Virus record (IMG/VR): IMGVR_UViG_3300044712_001255
Coordinates: 1 to 64,000 of that record
Length of the DNA stretch: 64,000 bases
Reading direction: 5' to 3' (one strand)
Shown: in pieces, positions 44,829-49,856 of the stretch
Layout: each line of letters opens with the position of its first letter
How positions within the stretch are numbered: position 1 is the first letter of the stretch
The notes under the pieces: generated by a model
The model's input: the letters and a program-made list of their open reading frames with translations, nothing else
Told to the model about the DNA's origin: nothing
The model's database searches: none
Program-made: the position numbers and the translations under genes

Positions 44829-46736
44829 ATGTCTAGATACTTTACACTCAATCAGCTCGCTGAGGGCATCAAGCAGAAGCACGTCGGTGCAGAGCGTGCT
44901 CGTCTCATCGAGAAATGGGCCCGTACGGGTCTTCTGCGTGGCCTTGATGGCCGCAAGCGCGAAAACATGGCGCAGCTCCTGGAAAACCAGGCTGGTCAGG
45001 TGCTCCTCGAGAGCAACGCCCTGTCGACAGGCGGCGGTGGTCTGACTTCCTCGGGACAGATCCAGGGTTTCAGCAACATCGCATTCCCGATCGTTCGTCG
45101 TGTATTCGGTGGCCTTGTTGCCAACGAGCTCGTGTCGATCCAGCCGATGTCCTTGCCTTCTGGTCTGATCTTCTATATCGACTACACCTACGGCAGCAAT
45201 GTCGGTGGTACAGCCGGTATCGGTCTGTCCAATACGGCGACGGCAGACACATATGCCCGTGGCCAGTCACTCTACAACAACCCCGCAGGTAAGGGAATCC
45301 AGTCTGGATCTCTTGCAACGGGTGGTCAGTATGACCTTGTTGGCACTGGATACACCAAGCTTCACACTGGATCAACTTTGATCTCCGTGAATGCAAACGC
45401 AATCGGTGCATGGTCCGGAGCATCCGACACCTTCGTGTCTGGTACGACCGTGGCGGCTCTCACTGACTTCTCTGGCTCGAATGCTCGCTTCGCTAACTAC
45501 GATCCGCAACTTCAGACTGACCTGTCTCTGAACACGCTCGATTACTGCTTCGCCCACTTCGCAGTTGCTGACATCGTGTCTGCTCTGCCGACAGCGAACG
45601 TTGCTGATGTTGATCAGTTCGCAGTGACCGGTTTCACAACGGCTGGAAGCTCCCAGGCATGGGGACAGGCATATCAGGCAGGAACTGGTGTGTTGAACCT
45701 CCGTCGCCTCAACAAGCGCGGCGATTTCTCTGGCGGCGTGTTCACTCCGAATCCGCTGAACGGAACTCACATCCAGACGGTTGTTCGTCTGTCTGCTGCT
45801 GGCGGTAAGCCAGGTCCAGCAACCACTGGTACCGAGACAACTACCTGCTCCATCACGGTGGCGGATGTTGTGAAGGCTGGTGACTCTGTTGGAGCAACCC
45901 TGACGATTCCGTCGTTTGAGTCTGACTTCGGTTCGACTCCTTCGCCGGCAATCCCGGACATCGACATCAAGATCGAGACCATCTCGATCACCGCAACCAC
46001 ACGCAAGCTGCGTGCTCGTTGGACTCCCGAGCTTGCTCAGGACCTCAACGCGTACCACAGCACTGACGCTGAGGTTGAGCTCACCAGCATTCTCTCCGAG
46101 CAGATCGCTCTTGAAATCGACCGCGAGATCTTGAACGAGCTTCTCCTTGAGGCAAACGGTGCGAACTACTACTGGAGCCGTGCTCCTGGCCGCTTCGTGG
46201 ACAAGACCACTGGCGCTCCGATCCAGCTCGCCAACGCGCTGTCAATCGGTCCGGCCTTCACCGGTACTGTTCAGGATTGGTACCAGACACTTGTCGAGAC
46301 CGTCATCGACGTTGCGAACACCATTCATAGGAAGACCCTCCGTGGAGCGGCAAACTTCTGCGTGACTGGCCCCGACGTTGCCACGATCTTCGAGGCATCG
46401 ATCCTCTACAAGCCGAAGTACACCATCGATGGTGAGGGGCAGATCGCTTCCCCGTTCACTGTCGGAGCCGAGGCTGTTGGAACGCTGTCGAATCGTTTCA
46501 CTGTCTACAAGGATCCTTACTTCCCTCGCAACCGCATCCTAGTCGGTTTCAAGGGTGGAAGCTACCTGGAGACAGGATTCGTGTACGCTCCTTACGTCCC
46601 GCTGATTGTCACCCCGACGATCTACGCGCCAGAGGACTTTACGCCTCGCAAGGGTGTGATGACTCGCTATGGCAAGAAGATGGTCAGAAGCGATTTTTAC
46701 GGCACCGTGACCATATTGGACATGAACATCGTCTAA
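44829..46736 (+). CDS. Major capsid protein (T4 gp23-like)
   Basis: EKW.RTGLL, FPIVRRVF, VQPMSLPSGLIF, RKLRARWTPELAQDL..YH..DAE.EL, EIDREI, YAPYVPL, MTRYG. Confidence 0.97.
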   Translation: MSRYFTLNQLAEGIKQKHVGAERARLIEKWARTGLLRGLDGRKRENMAQLLENQAGQVLLESNALSTGGGGLTSSGQIQGFSNIAFPIVRRVFGGLVANELVSIQPMSLPSGLIFYIDYTYGSNVGGTAGIGLSNTATADTYARGQSLYNNPAGKGIQSGSLATGGQYDLVGTGYTKLHTGSTLISVNANAIGAWSGASDTFVSGTTVAALTDFSGSNARFANYDPQLQTDLSLNTLDYCFAHFAVADIVSALPTANVADVDQFAVTGFTTAGSSQAWGQAYQAGTGVLNLRRLNKRGDFSGGVFTPNPLNGTHIQTVVRLSAAGGKPGPATTGTETTTCSITVADVVKAGDSVGATLTIPSFESDFGSTPSPAIPDIDIKIETISITATTRKLRARWTPELAQDLNAYHSTDAEVELTSILSEQIALEIDREILNELLLEANGANYYWSRAPGRFVDKTTGAPIQLANALSIGPAFTGTVQDWYQTLVETVIDVANTIHRKTLRGAANFCVTGPDVATIFEASILYKPKYTIDGEGQIASPFTVGAEAVGTLSNRFTVYKDPYFPRNRILVGFKGGSYLETGFVYAPYVPLIVTPTIYAPEDFTPRKGVMTRYGKKMVRSDFYGTVTILDMNIV

Positions 46737-46828: not shown

Positions 46829-47692
46829 ATGATCAAGTGTAAAGAGTGTGGATATGAATGCTCGGCACAAAATGCGTTAGGCTATCACTTACGTTCTCAT
46901 GGAATGTCTTACGATGATTACGTTGTGAAACATGATCACAATGGTGTTTGGCCAATATGCTCATGTGGCAAACGATTGCAACGTAAAAAGGGAGGGTTTA
47001 GCAAACATTGCGGCAAATCATGTGCGTCAAAAGGCGCTAACAACGGAATGTTTGGTAAGAAGGGCGACGATTCTCCGAACTTTGGGTTGATTCGTTCAGA
47101 GCAACAACGTAAGAATTATTCGAAAGGCGCAAAGAAACGTTGGGAATTACACGGCGATAACCTTCGATCTATGATGAAGACACCAGAATATCGACAATCC
47201 CAAAGAGATGCAAACATAATATCGTATGCAACAACAGATCGTGCTGAGAAAACATCTCAATCTGTTAGAAAATTTTGGCAATCTGATTCTGAGATCACTA
47301 AACAACGTCGTAAAGAAGCGTCTAACAGAGCGATTCAATTGCTAGAGATTGGAAAGATTGGTCCACAAGCTCCGTTCAAGGCAGAGTGGATATTAAATCC
47401 TTTCACAAATCAACAAGAATACATGCATTCGTCTTGGGAAACTTTGTTCTTAAATGAATGCATAAAATCAAACTTTCCAGTTACAAAGGCGCATTTAATT
47501 CGTATTGCATATCTTTTGCCAGATGGTAGCGAACATATTTACGTACCTGATTTTGTTTCAATCGATGGTTCGAATTTGTTGATTGAAATCAAGGGTCGAC
47601 GTACAGAAGTTGATGATATCAAATTCAAAGCTTGCAAAGCATGGTGTGTTCAAAATGGATATGAAGTTGTAATGATTGGTGATGCACGATAA
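46829..47692 (+). CDS. Putative free-standing homing endonuclease (C2H2 Zn finger, NUMOD3-like, C-terminal PD-(D/E)xK)
   Basis: CKEC...HLRSH; CSCG...HCGKSC; NGMFGKK; HSSWE...YVPDF...IEIKG. Confidence 0.75.
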   Translation: MIKCKECGYECSAQNALGYHLRSHGMSYDDYVVKHDHNGVWPICSCGKRLQRKKGGFSKHCGKSCASKGANNGMFGKKGDDSPNFGLIRSEQQRKNYSKGAKKRWELHGDNLRSMMKTPEYRQSQRDANIISYATTDRAEKTSQSVRKFWQSDSEITKQRRKEASNRAIQLLEIGKIGPQAPFKAEWILNPFTNQQEYMHSSWETLFLNECIKSNFPVTKAHLIRIAYLLPDGSEHIYVPDFVSIDGSNLLIEIKGRRTEVDDIKFKACKAWCVQNGYEVVMIGDAR

Positions 47693-47717
47693 TTCGTGTG
47701 TTAGATATTGGGTAACC

Positions 47718-48287
47718 ATGGACGAGCTAACACAGTTTATCAGAGAGACGGTGGATGACCACCTGCGGTCTCGTGGTATGGACTCTGCCAAAACGTATGT
47801 TGTGGTGGACGAAGCATCAAATGTTGCGACGTTTCTGCTGTTCAATTTGACGGGTCAACTCGTTGGGTATCAACAGTATCGTCCTGACGCAGATAAAAAG
47901 GTTGGCAATGATCCATCACTTGCTCGATACTTCACATACGTCGGGTCAGAAGGCAAGGGCAAGAAGCTTGCTGTGTGGGGGTTAGAAACAGTTGAATGGA
48001 CTGATGATTACCTGTTTGTTGTTGAAGGCATTTTTGATGCCGTAAAGGTGCATAACGCAGGTCACCCTTGCATTGCTGTATTGTGTAATGACCCTCGACC
48101 GATGAAAGCATGGTTCAAGGCAATGGGCAAACACGTGATCGCCGTGTTAGATCGTGACGCAGCTGGTAATAAGCTGCGAAATATTGCAAACGCTAATGTT
48201 GTCGTACCTGAACCATACAAGGATTTGGGTGATATGCCACAGGAAGAGGCAACTCGTTTCATTGACCATGCATTGACGAATACTTAG
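47718..48287 (+). CDS. Toprim-domain primase-like protein without Zn finger
   Basis: FVVEGIFD, VLDRDAAG, YKDLGD. ORF track start is 47676. Confidence 0.8.
   Translation: MDELTQFIRETVDDHLRSRGMDSAKTYVVVDEASNVATFLLFNLTGQLVGYQQYRPDADKKVGNDPSLARYFTYVGSEGKGKKLAVWGLETVEWTDDYLFVVEGIFDAVKVHNAGHPCIAVLCNDPRPMKAWFKAMGKHVIAVLDRDAAGNKLRNIANANVVVPEPYKDLGDMPQEEATRFIDHALTNT
48280..48286 (+). promoter_or_regulatory. Candidate late promoter ATACTTA
   Basis: Recurrent motif, 6 nt before ATG 48293. Confidence 0.4.
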
Positions 48288-49061: not shown

Positions 49062-49469
49062 ATGAGTTTGAAGCTTAAACTGACGCCGGCTGAGACGCTT
49101 GCGCTTTATGACATTGTAACGTTGTTAGATCATGCCAAGGATCTTCCTGAGGATCACCCGCTTGTAGCAGAAACTATCTTGGGAGGCGTGAGACGTAAGC
49201 TTCGATTTCTGATTGAGAAGACTCTTAATACTAGTAAGAGCGACGAGGCAGAACCATTTTACGTTGACGCTGGGAACTTGAAAAAGGAGAAACTTGAGGA
49301 GTGGTTGTCAATTCAACACGAAAAGCTTGCGTCATTGCAAGATAAGCGTGTGGGTCTACCACAACAAGCCGCAGACCAATCTGTAGATGTTGTTCTGGAC
49401 GACCTACAGAATCGACCAGATTATCCAAAGAACTTTGTTCGTCGCGACAAGAAACGTCGTGGACGATAG
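49062..49469 (+). CDS. Hypothetical protein abutting tmRNA
   Basis: AGGAGA SD; basic tail RRDKKRRGR; stop codon 3 nt before the tmRNA. Confidence 0.75.
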   Translation: MSLKLKLTPAETLALYDIVTLLDHAKDLPEDHPLVAETILGGVRRKLRFLIEKTLNTSKSDEAEPFYVDAGNLKKEKLEEWLSIQHEKLASLQDKRVGLPQQAADQSVDVVLDDLQNRPDYPKNFVRRDKKRRGR

Positions 49470-49472
49470 AAT

Positions 49473-49830
49473 GGGACCGACAGGATTCGACGGAGGTAAT
49501 AACTAAACAATTGCACGCAGGCGGTGCTCGCGTCCGCCTCAAACAATGTGAGCAAACGTTCAGTTGCAAACGACAACGCAACAGTTCTTCGGGCTGCGGC
49601 TTGAGAACCGATCCTAAGATGAGATAGTTCTTGTAATCTGTGGATCGTCAACCCACCAGAGCTTGGCCAAGCGGTAATTGTGTGATAGGCCGATGGCGAG
49701 AAAAATACACACAGGCCTCCTTTGGCAGCACAAAGGAACTCACCCGTCAGGGATATGATGGGCAAGCGTGTGAATGAAATTGAATAGAGAAGACTTGCGG
49801 ACGGTGGTTCAAATCCACCCGGTTCCACTA
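49473..49830 (+). ncRNA. ssrA: tmRNA (transfer-messenger RNA), tag ANDNATVLRAAA
   Basis: 5' GGGACCG pairs with 3' CGGTTCC-A including the G3-U wobble; GGATTCGAC D-loop mimic; T arm GGTGG-TTCAAAT-CCACC; pk1 GCAC/GTGC with AGGCG/CGCCT; tag ORF 49566-49604. Confidence 0.97.
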
Positions 49831-49856
49831 TGATCAATTTTCATTAGTTCCACCAT

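What the first reader, a model, noticed from the sequence alone, without database searches (positions are those of the whole stretch)
49473..49830. Complete phage tmRNA without an encoded CCA
The alanine identity elements (G3-U pair, discriminator A) and pk1 are intact. The tag ANDNATVLRAAA ends in the Ala-Ala ClpX degron but has an unusual basic residue, and a small hairpin (AATGT/ACGTT) may lie between pk1 and the resume codon. The gene ends ACTA rather than ACCA, so it needs trimming and CCA addition. Phage tmRNAs are known but uncommon, and the tag may help identify the host lineage.
Basis: partly seen in the sequence, partly recalled or inferred. Interest (0 to 1): 0.6.

Follow-up and report, generated by a model that had tools for sequence, protein, structure and literature searches.

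The report
Phage tmRNA gene lacking encoded CCA
A 324-kb soil (rhizosphere) phage carries its own, apparently working copy of the ribosome-rescue RNA tmRNA; phage tmRNAs are already known, so this is a well-supported new example and not a new kind of thing.

Summary
ARAGORN and Rfam RF00023 (97.1 bits, cut-off 47, E 1e-36, full length) both call a one-piece tmRNA at 49473-49830 (+) with the tag ANDNATVLRAAA and a 3' end ...CGGTTCC-A-CTA. The window is the first 64 kb of a 324-kb T4-like jumbo phage from a rhizosphere metagenome. That phage has 47 tRNA genes, none with an encoded CCA, and no SmpB, CCA-adding enzyme or integrase was found in it.

The gene is not a one-off. Thirteen of 50 related phage contigs carry a homologous tmRNA, mostly 2-8 kb downstream of the capsid gene. 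The helices covary (30 of 41 pairs show compensatory changes), and presence of the gene is clustered on the capsid tree. A sediment metatranscriptome holds two contigs that lie only inside the tmRNA.

Two side claims fail. The AATGT/ACGTT hairpin is not conserved and clashes with pk1. The basic residue is normal for alphaproteobacterial tags, of which 27 of 29 sampled start ANDN and 3 end RAAA.

The one twist is that the tag looks alphaproteobacterial while the gene is one-piece. Sampled Alphaproteobacteria and the Sphingobium phage Lacusarx have only the permuted two-piece form.

Verdict: a real, probably functional gene and a new member of a known kind.

The parts
49473..49830 (+). tmRNA (ssrA) gene, standard one-piece form. 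The mature RNA probably ends at A49827 or C49828, with the rest of CCA added after transcription.
   Evidence: ARAGORN; Rfam RF00023 97.1 bits, E 1.2e-36, full model; no match to the permuted alpha_tmRNA model RF01849
49473..49479 (+). 5' strand of the acceptor stem (GGGACCG); G3 forms the G.U alanine identity pair
   Evidence: Sequence; the acceptor stem covaries in 13 homologues
49483..49491 (+). Conserved D-loop-like element GGATTCGAC of the tRNA-like domain
   Evidence: Invariant or near-invariant columns in alignment A1; Rfam alignment
49491..49518 (+). Helix 2, 5' strand; pairs with 49766-49799
   Evidence: Minimum-free-energy fold; compensatory changes in RNAalifold pairs 21-49 with 381-414
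49519..49554 (+). Pseudoknot pk1. Stem 1 is AGGCGG 49519-24 with CCGCCT 49534-39. Stem 2 is TGCTC 49525-29 with GAGCA 49550-54.
   Evidence: Direct reading; both stems are kept in relatives with several pair types
49556..49565 (+). Single-stranded stretch before the resume codon (ACGTTCAGTT). The ACGU...A(-4)..U(-1) pattern is conserved in the family.
   Evidence: Its role in frame setting is inferred from E. coli A86 work (established knowledge).
49566..49604 (+). Tag reading frame: resume codon GCA, 12 codons (ANDNATVLRAAA), stop TGA at 49602-49604
   Evidence: ARAGORN; translation
49584..49608 (+). Helix 5 (GTTCT 49584-88 with AGAAC 49604-08), which holds the stop codon
   Evidence: Rfam alignment
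49609..49647 (+). Hairpin in the pk2 position (CGATCC with GGATCG, and inner AGAT with ATCT). I found no second pseudoknot stem.
49663..49713 (+). H-type pseudoknot in the pk3 position: TTGGCC 49663-68 with GGCCGA 49688-93, and TGTGTG 49679-84 with CACACA 49708-13
   Evidence: Direct reading, verified; not tested by covariation because the alignment is poor here
49719..49762 (+). Two hairpins in the pk4 position: CCTTTG with CAAAGG, and CCCGTCA with TGATGGG
   Evidence: Minimum-free-energy fold
49766..49799 (+). Helix 2, 3' strand
49803..49819 (+). T arm: GGTGG, loop TTCAAAT, CCACC
   Evidence: all 5 pairs are kept, with compensatory changes in 4 of them
49820..49830 (+). 3' acceptor strand CGGTTCC, discriminator A49827, then CTA where CCA would be
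   Evidence: Sequence. In relatives the same position is CCA in 3, CCG in 1, and a single C followed by other bases in most of the rest.
49847..49855 (+). Downstream repeat GTTCCACCA of the tmRNA 3' end, here followed by CA. Its meaning is unknown.
   Evidence: the nearest relative has an imperfect counterpart; no other family member does
49062..49469 (+). Upstream ORF (135 aa, no family match) whose stop codon lies 3 nt before the tmRNA 5' end. This suggests co-transcription followed by RNase P cleavage.
   Evidence: the processing step is inferred

Best explanation
This is a functional, phage-encoded, standard one-piece tmRNA of a T4-like jumbo phage.

Inferred life cycle:
1. It is transcribed with, or just after, the upstream late-region genes.
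2. RNase P cuts its 5' end.
3. Its 3' trailer is trimmed back to A73 or C74, and the host CCA-adding enzyme completes the CCA, as must also happen for all 47 of the phage's tRNAs.
4. Host AlaRS charges it through G3.U70 and A73.
5. With host SmpB and EF-Tu it enters ribosomes stalled on broken or stop-less mRNAs.
6. Translation resumes at GCA 49566, adds ANDNATVLRAAA, and ends at UGA. This frees the ribosome and marks the peptide for host proteases.

The benefit to the phage would be to keep ribosomes recycling during a long infection, when host transcription (and so host tmRNA supply) falls and mRNA cleavage is heavy.

The tag is alphaproteobacterial in style, which suggests it is matched to the host's degradation machinery.

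What is shown: the gene, its structure, its conservation and covariation in a phage clade, and its presence in an RNA library. What is inferred: processing, charging, the partners and the benefit.
For: Identity and completeness.

Phage context.

Conservation:
- 13 of 50 related phage records have an RF00023 match over the cut-off, mostly 2-8 kb downstream of the capsid gene.
- Mean column identity is only 55%, yet 30 of 41 predicted pairs show compensatory changes.
- pk1 is kept.
- Tags keep the ANDN head and the Ala-Ala tail while the middle varies.
- tmRNA presence is clustered on the capsid tree: 4 changes against 9.6 in shuffles, with 0 of 500 shuffles as low.

RNA: in a sediment metatranscriptome the only two contigs on a 1.4-kb stretch lie at 49481-49631 and 49640-49790, inside the tmRNA.

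CCA-less style shared with the phage's tRNAs: 0 of 47 encode CCA and 43 of 47 have C74.

Dependence on the host: no SmpB, CCA-adding enzyme or integrase was found in the 324-kb record.

Tag style: 27 of 29 sampled alphaproteobacterial tags start ANDN, against 2 of 32 in the Gamma/Beta class. The RAAA and AP-x-A-x-AA endings occur only in the alpha sample. The Sphingobium phage Lacusarx has the tag ANDNDVVTAEVRLAA.
Against: - There is no direct evidence of aminoacylation, SmpB binding or tagging.
- The RNA evidence is two low-depth contigs from another habitat, one of them with 3 differences. DNA carry-over in that library cannot be excluded, and the 3' end is not covered.
- The tail ...RAAA lacks the Leu of the canonical LAA ClpX signal, so it may be a weak degron.
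- The record is an estimated 86% complete, so a phage SmpB or CCA-adding enzyme could lie in the missing part.
- Many relatives lack the gene, so it is dispensable.
- The host is unknown. The nearest cultured phages (38-47% identity) infect Microcystis and Flavobacterium and have no tmRNA.
Confidence: 0.72

Rival explanations
1. The RNA works as a competitor and not as a helper. It displaces host tmRNA, or titrates host SmpB, so that rescued peptides get a phage-chosen tag (...RAAA) that host ClpXP handles poorly. This would spare the proteases or change what is degraded.
For: - The window's tail RAAA departs from the family's usual LAA.
- No phage SmpB was found, so it must share the host's.
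- The literature reports that a TLD-only phage tmRNA (DS6A type) inhibits host tmRNA (PMC4131195, PMC11915505).
- The Lacusarx authors suggested counteracting host tagging (PMC5648845).
Against: - RAAA tails also occur in 3 of 29 sampled bacterial alphaproteobacterial tmRNAs, so they are native working tags somewhere.
- Most relatives keep a canonical LAA tail.
- A pure inhibitor would not need a conserved pk1, resume context, reading frame and in-helix stop codon.
Confidence: 0.18
2. It is a passenger: a tmRNA gene picked up from a bacterium and now neutral or decaying. The missing CCA would be a first sign of decay.
For: - CCA is not encoded.
- The gene is absent from many relatives.
- The pk2 and pk4 positions look like plain hairpins.
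Against: - Homologues in at least 12 other phage contigs keep the fold through compensatory changes at 55% identity.
- CCA-less ends are the rule for all 47 tRNAs of this phage and for most family members.
- No blastn-level similarity to any phage record was found. One exact-pattern scan of 185,579 bacterial species for a window-like tag found no tmRNA, though overall similarity to bacterial tmRNAs was not searched. Together these argue against a recent capture.
- RNA contigs exist.
- tmRNA genes do not always encode CCA (PMC11915505).
Confidence: 0.06
3. It is not a phage gene in function: either bacterial DNA joined to the phage by mis-assembly, or an attachment site for integration into a host ssrA gene.
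For: - tmRNA 3' ends are classic integration sites.
- A 9-nt repeat of the 3' end lies 17 nt downstream.
Against: - One DNA contig of the source run covers the whole stretch with no differences.
- Phage genes lie on both sides, and the gene sits at the same place in related phages.
- It is a full-length gene and not a 3' fragment.
- No integrase was found in 324 kb.
- T4-like jumbo phages are lytic (established knowledge).
Confidence: 0.03

Closest known systems
Standard one-piece bacterial tmRNA (SsrA, Rfam RF00023)
   Same: It has a tRNA-like domain with G3.U70, A73 and a T arm. It has helix 2, pk1, an Ala resume codon, a short tag ending Ala-Ala, a stop codon in helix 5, and further 3' pseudoknots or hairpins. 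It scores 97 bits against the model.
   Different: It is encoded by a phage. CCA is not encoded. The pk2 and pk4 positions look like hairpins. The score is far below that of typical proteobacterial genes (about 160-240 bits).
tmRNAs of jumbo and huge phages (Al-Shayeb 2020, PMC7162821; Bacillus phage G; cluster C mycobacteriophages, PMC4131195)
   Same: A complete tmRNA in a very large phage genome, alongside a large tRNA set.
   Different: It belongs to a different, uncultured T4-like clade with no blastn similarity to any of 50,697 phage records. Some huge phages also carry SmpB, but this one shows none. A more distant 224-kb phage found here (G050) does carry SmpB.
Permuted (two-piece) tmRNAs of phages that infect Alphaproteobacteria or their relatives: Sphingobium phage Lacusarx, and the Melnitz phage and pelagimyophages (PMC9004378)
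   Same: The tag style is the same: an ANDN head and an Arg near an Ala-Ala tail (Lacusarx tag ANDNDVVTAEVRLAA). These are also lytic phages that carry tRNAs.
   Different: Those genes are circularly permuted, like their hosts' (RF01849 at 79.5 bits in Lacusarx). The window's gene is one-piece and does not match RF01849 at all.
TLD-only mini-tmRNA of mycobacteriophage DS6A
   Same: A phage-borne tRNA-like domain that would use host SmpB.
   Different: DS6A lacks the mRNA part and acts as an inhibitor (PMC4131195). The window's gene has a complete, conserved reading frame.
CCA-less tRNA genes of phage T4 (established knowledge, not tested here)
   Same: The 3' ends must be trimmed and then finished by the host CCA-adding enzyme.
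   Different: Here the rule covers all 47 tRNAs plus the tmRNA, and 43 of 47 keep just the first C.

Membership tests
tmRNA, standard one-piece form (RF00023) | Covariance-model score at or above the curated gathering score over the full model | tested here: met
   97.1 bits against 47, E 1.2e-36, model positions 1-374; ARAGORN agrees
tmRNA, standard one-piece form (RF00023) | tRNA-Ala-like domain: 7-bp acceptor stem with G3.U70, discriminator A, T arm with a 7-nt loop | tested here: met
   GGGACCG with CGGTTCC, A49827, and GGTGG/TTCAAAT/CCACC; the stems covary
tmRNA, standard one-piece form (RF00023) | Pseudoknot pk1 between helix 2 and the resume codon | tested here: met
   Stems of 6 bp and 5 bp; both are kept in relatives
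tmRNA, standard one-piece form (RF00023) | Short tag frame that starts at an Ala resume codon, ends in Ala-Ala, and has its stop codon in helix 5 | tested here: met
   GCA...ANDNATVLRAAA-TGA, with the stop inside the GTTCT/AGAAC helix
tmRNA, standard one-piece form (RF00023) | Encoded 3' CCA (common but not defining: 'not always encoding CCA', PMC11915505) | tested here: not met
   It ends A-CTA. In the family CCA is encoded in 3 of 13. 0 of 47 phage tRNAs encode it.
tmRNA, standard one-piece form (RF00023) | The RNA is made and accumulates | tested here: inconclusive
   Two 151-nt metatranscriptome contigs lie only within the gene. They are at low depth, come from another habitat, and do not cover the 3' end.
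tmRNA, standard one-piece form (RF00023) | Alanylation, SmpB binding, and tagging of stalled peptides | not testable with these tools
   This needs biochemistry or genetics. No SmpB gene was found in the phage record, so a host SmpB is assumed.
Permuted two-piece alphaproteobacterial tmRNA (RF01849) | Circularly permuted gene order (acceptor piece before coding piece) that matches the alpha_tmRNA model | tested here: not met
   There is no RF01849 match in the whole phage genome, and ARAGORN calls the gene non-permuted. For comparison, 60 of 61 sampled Alphaproteobacteria match RF01849 and 0 of 61 match RF00023 over the cut-off.
ssrA-derived attachment site of a temperate phage | A 3' fragment of ssrA next to an integrase | tested here: not met
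   The gene is full length, and there is no PF00589 integrase in 324 kb

The most novel reading that the evidence does not exclude
This clade of T4-like jumbo phages infects Alphaproteobacteria, whose own tmRNA is always the permuted two-piece form. Yet the phages maintain a one-piece tmRNA with an alphaproteobacterial-style tag (ANDN head, AP-x-A-x-AA or R-AAA tails). That would mean either that the tag converged on the host's adaptor and protease signals while the RNA body came from elsewhere, or that the phages preserve a pre-permutation alphaproteobacterial tmRNA. Either way it would give a natural experiment on whether a one-piece tmRNA can work with the SmpB and processing system of a two-piece host.
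Probability: 0.3. Interest if true: 0.55.

Novelty: new member of a known kind. Interest (0 to 1): 0.3.

Why it matters
The finding adds a well-supported, structurally conserved tmRNA lineage from an uncultured clade of soil and freshwater jumbo phages to the small set of known phage tmRNAs. It shows that the missing CCA is a house style shared with all of this phage's tRNAs and not a defect. This implies wholesale reliance on the host's 3' trimming and CCA-adding enzymes.

The tag comparison is a useful, testable host clue pointing to Alphaproteobacteria. The mismatch between tag style and gene architecture is a modest evolutionary puzzle. Nothing here changes what is known about how trans-translation works.

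Tried and rejected
1. blastn of the window tmRNA and of a typical family member against 50,697 phage records found no match.
2. A scan of 185,579 species genomes for a frame coding ANDNAxxxRAAA-stop gave 4 hits, none of them a tmRNA (ARAGORN and Rfam found nothing). The Brucella hit is the C-terminus of an ordinary 259-aa ORF. So the tag does not pinpoint a host.
4. The attachment-site and mis-assembly readings are rejected.
5. The neighbouring N6_N4 DNA methylase is only 31-33% identical to the CcrM-sized genes of four alphaproteobacterial genomes, which is not informative about the host.
6. The nearest cultured phages (Microcystis Mel-JY01, Flavobacterium immuto) have no tmRNA, so they could not serve as a tag-host control. 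The uncultured phage LR756508 has one, but its tag is unclear.
7. phiCbK has no tmRNA under either model.
8. No accession is printed for the Sinorhizobium jumbo phage AP-J-162, and Mao et al. 2009 is not held in the library.
9. No clear promoter or terminator was found. A weak sigma-70-like match abuts the 5' end and is too close to serve as its promoter.
10. Phyla other than Pseudomonadota could not be sampled for tags because I had no genome handles for them.

The tallies each include one unpublished genome (G093 or G152). No sequence or tag from those genomes is used here.

Full report
OBSERVATION. ARAGORN finds a single tmRNA in the window, at 49473-49828 on the + strand, with the tag ANDNATVLRAAA*. 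Rfam's tmRNA model RF00023 matches 49473-49830 over its full length at 97.1 bits, against a gathering score of 47, with E 1.2e-36. The main features were read directly and checked by script:
- The acceptor stem is GGGACCG with CGGTTCC, giving G3.U70.
- The discriminator is A49827, and CTA stands where CCA would be.
- The T arm is GGTGG/TTCAAAT/CCACC.
- The D-loop-like element is GGATTCGAC.
- pk1 has a 6-bp stem (AGGCGG with CCGCCT) and a 5-bp stem (TGCTC with GAGCA).
- The resume codon GCA is at 49566, followed by twelve codons, and the stop UGA lies inside helix 5.
- Downstream there is a hairpin, a clear H-type pseudoknot (TTGGCC with GGCCGA, and TGTGTG with CACACA) and two more hairpins.
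The single-sequence fold is more stable than shuffles (z = -3.7).

CONTEXT. The window is the first 64 kb of a 324,468-bp virus record, estimated 86% complete. Around the gene lie a gp23-type major capsid protein (44829-46736), an HNH-like endonuclease, a primase-like fragment, two ORFs with no family match, two methyltransferases and an endolysin. Further upstream are TerL, a helicase and PhoH. The capsid and terminase proteins are only 37-47% identical to the nearest cultured phages, Microcystis phage Mel-JY01 and the Flavobacterium 'immuto' phages. This is therefore an uncultured, distant T4-like jumbo phage. The stretch is held identically by a rhizosphere metagenome, which is probably its source. 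The upstream ORF stops 3 nt before the tmRNA 5' end. No convincing promoter or terminator flanks the gene. Co-transcription followed by RNase P cleavage is therefore inferred, not shown.

THE MISSING CCA IS THE RULE IN THIS GENOME. The whole genome has 47 tRNA genes. None encodes CCA, but 43 of 47 have C directly after the discriminator, while the genome's C frequency is 0.22. The tmRNA has the same ending (A-C, then TA). No CCA-adding enzyme (PF01743), SmpB (PF01668) or integrase (PF00589) was found in the record. The phage therefore appears to rely on host 3' trimming, the host CCA-adding enzyme and host SmpB. The tmRNA database authors note that the CCA position is 'not always encoding CCA' (PMC11915505), so this is not a defect.

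A CONSERVED PHAGE LINEAGE. IMG/VR holds hundreds of contigs with a capsid protein 62-80% identical to this one. ARAGORN found a tmRNA 2-8 kb downstream of the capsid gene in ten of them. Rfam found a match over the cut-off in 13 of 50 whole records. One of the 13, G050, was not found through the capsid search but through a T-arm pattern scan. The 13 distinct sequences share only 55% mean column identity. Even so, 30 of 41 RNAalifold pairs are kept through changes on both sides, in the acceptor stem, helix 2, pk1, the first 3' hairpin and the T arm. pk1 stem 1 pairs in 42 of 52 cells with six pair types. The tags keep an ANDN head and an Ala-Ala tail while the middle varies: ANDNAFADVPRAIAA, ANDNAVAPLALAA, ANDNGTAPLALAA, ANDNGLTSLRLAA and others. 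On a capsid tree of 30 phages, tmRNA presence needs 4 changes against 9.6 in label shuffles, and 0 of 500 shuffles were as low. This points to inheritance within the clade with some gains or losses. The 'absent' labels come from fragments, so some may be wrong. At the 3' end three relatives encode CCA, one has CCG, and most of the others have a single C followed by other bases.

RNA EVIDENCE. One sediment metatranscriptome holds two 151-nt contigs on the 1.4-kb stretch I laid. One covers 49481-49631 with no differences and the other 49640-49790 with three differences. Both lie inside the tmRNA and none touches the flanking coding DNA. That fits a stable, abundant RNA from this phage or a near relative. 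It is weak evidence, though: the depth is low, these are contigs and not reads, DNA carry-over cannot be excluded, and the last 40 nt are not covered. It therefore says nothing about CCA.

The AATGT/ACGTT hairpin can be drawn, but its loop is the GAGCA strand of pk1 stem 2. In the family only 28 of 65 cells pair, and the inner two pairs form in 2 of 13 sequences. I reject it. What is conserved there is a single-stranded ACGU...A(-4)..U(-1) stretch before the resume codon. It is comparable to the U-A-G-U-C context of E. coli, where A86 matters for frame choice (established knowledge).

The 'unusual basic residue' is not unusual. I scanned 185,579 species genomes for a frame coding ANDNAxxxRAAA-stop. 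The four hits are not tmRNAs, and one is the end of an ordinary 259-aa Brucella ORF. They did give me genome handles into two classes. In an evenly drawn sample of Alphaproteobacteria, 60 of 61 genomes have the permuted alpha_tmRNA. Of 29 tags read there, 27 start ANDN, 8 have Arg or Lys in the last six residues, and 3 end RAAA: ANDNVALRAAA, ANDNFAEVRAAA and ANDNFAEARAAA. In the class that holds Gamma- and Betaproteobacteria, 2 of 32 tags start ANDN, none ends AAA, and 1 has a late basic residue. The AP-x-A-x-AA endings of several phage relatives also occur only in the alpha sample. As a control with a known host, the Sphingobium phage Lacusarx has the tag ANDNDVVTAEVRLAA.

THE TWIST. The tag is alphaproteobacterial in style, but the gene is not. 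It is one-piece and does not match RF01849 at all. Conversely, 0 of 61 sampled Alphaproteobacteria have an RF00023 match over the cut-off; all the sub-threshold hits are tRNA-sized. Lacusarx's gene is permuted (79.5 bits to RF01849), and so are the tmRNAs of the Melnitz phage and the pelagimyophages according to PMC9004378. There are two readings:
(a) The host is an alphaproteobacterium, and the phage keeps a one-piece RNA with a host-style tag.
(b) The host belongs to a one-piece lineage with ANDN-type tags that I could not sample, since I could reach only two classes of one phylum.
I put (a) at about 0.3 as a full statement. The habitat fits it (rhizosphere). So does the low G+C of known jumbo rhizobiophages: 37-47% in PMC11242549, against 44% here. 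Neither point is proof.

MECHANISM. The best explanation (0.72) is a working trans-translation RNA that uses the host's RNase P, 3' exonucleases or RNase Z, CCA-adding enzyme, AlaRS, SmpB and EF-Tu. It would keep ribosomes recycling late in a long infection and tag truncated peptides for host proteases. The main rival (0.18) is a competitor role, in which the phage substitutes a tag (RAAA, lacking the Leu of LAA) that ClpXP handles differently, or titrates SmpB. RAAA tails do occur in bacterial tmRNAs, and most relatives keep LAA, which weakens that rival. Covariation, the family-wide CCA-less style, the synteny, the identical DNA contig and the lack of an integrase argue strongly against a decaying passenger (0.06), mis-assembly or an attachment site (0.03).

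KNOWN OR NEW. Phage tmRNAs are on record in several groups:
- Cluster C mycobacteriophages and Bacillus phage G (PMC4131195, PMC12484599).
- Huge phages, some of them with SmpB (PMC7162821).
- Lacusarx (PMC5648845).
- A Sinorhizobium jumbo phage (PMC11242549).
- 2.3% of isolate phage genomes overall (PMC9004378).
This gene passes every structural membership test for the standard tmRNA family. It is a new member of a known kind, from a clade with no cultured representative. The tag-versus-architecture mismatch is the only point a specialist might find mildly surprising.

CAVEATS. No biochemical property was tested. The host is unknown. The virus records are fragments, so an absence in them is soft evidence. 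The samples each include one unpublished genome (G093 or G152), from which no sequence is used.

Noticed in passing
Outside the window: G000 213410-283308 and c313007-313079: There are 47 tRNA genes. None encodes CCA, yet 43 of 47 have C at position 74, against a genome C frequency of 0.22. Many are packed head to tail, so that the next tRNA starts right after that C.
   Followed up: partly
Outside the window: G000 c313007-313079: A well-formed tRNA with anticodon UUA, which would read the UAA stop codon, sits apart from the tRNA arrays. ORF stop codons are TGA 145, TAA 80 and TAG 33, and ORFs of at least 100 aa cover 86% of the genome under code 11. There is no sign of recoding. The tmRNA tag ends in UGA, which this tRNA would not read.
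   Followed up: partly
window 49847-49855: GTTCCACCA repeats the last bases of the tmRNA 17 nt downstream, this time with the CA that the gene itself lacks. The nearest relative (G001, locus L096) has AACGGTTCCA 14 nt after its own 3' end. No other family member shows this. It could be a duplication scar or chance.
   Followed up: partly
L096:1501-1856 (record G001, nearest relative): Its acceptor stem GGGGCCG with CGGTCCC gives G3-C70 with G4.U69 and discriminator G, and CCA is encoded. This departs from the alanine identity rule unless the true 5' end is shifted by one base.
   Followed up: no
window 46829-48287: An HNH-like endonuclease ORF (46829-47692) lies between the capsid gene and a 203-aa primase-like ORF. 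That ORF matches only positions 148-340 of a 435-position primase family. It may be a gene split by a homing endonuclease.
   Followed up: no
L178 and L179 (LR756508.1, 484-kb uncultured phage): This record holds both a full tmRNA (72 bits, tag unclear) and a separate 112-nt tmRNA-like gene (58 bits) that is little more than the tRNA-like domain, like mycobacteriophage DS6A.
   Followed up: partly
L186 (record G050, 163040-163474): A 224-kb phage found through a T-arm pattern scan carries both a tmRNA (115 bits, tag ANTKLYIPQTARVAA, CCA encoded) and an SmpB gene (164 bits).
   Followed up: no
L111:35-814 (Brucella pseudogrignonensis) and L113 (Xylophilus MAG): An ordinary 259-aa ORF ends ...AANDNAESQRAAA*. 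This is a genome-encoded C-terminus that looks like an alphaproteobacterial ssrA tag, and a terminator-like hairpin follows it. It is not a tmRNA.
   Followed up: partly
Outside the window: G000 200001-210000: Only 28% of this 10-kb stretch is covered by ORFs of at least 100 aa, against 74-100% elsewhere in the genome.
   Followed up: no
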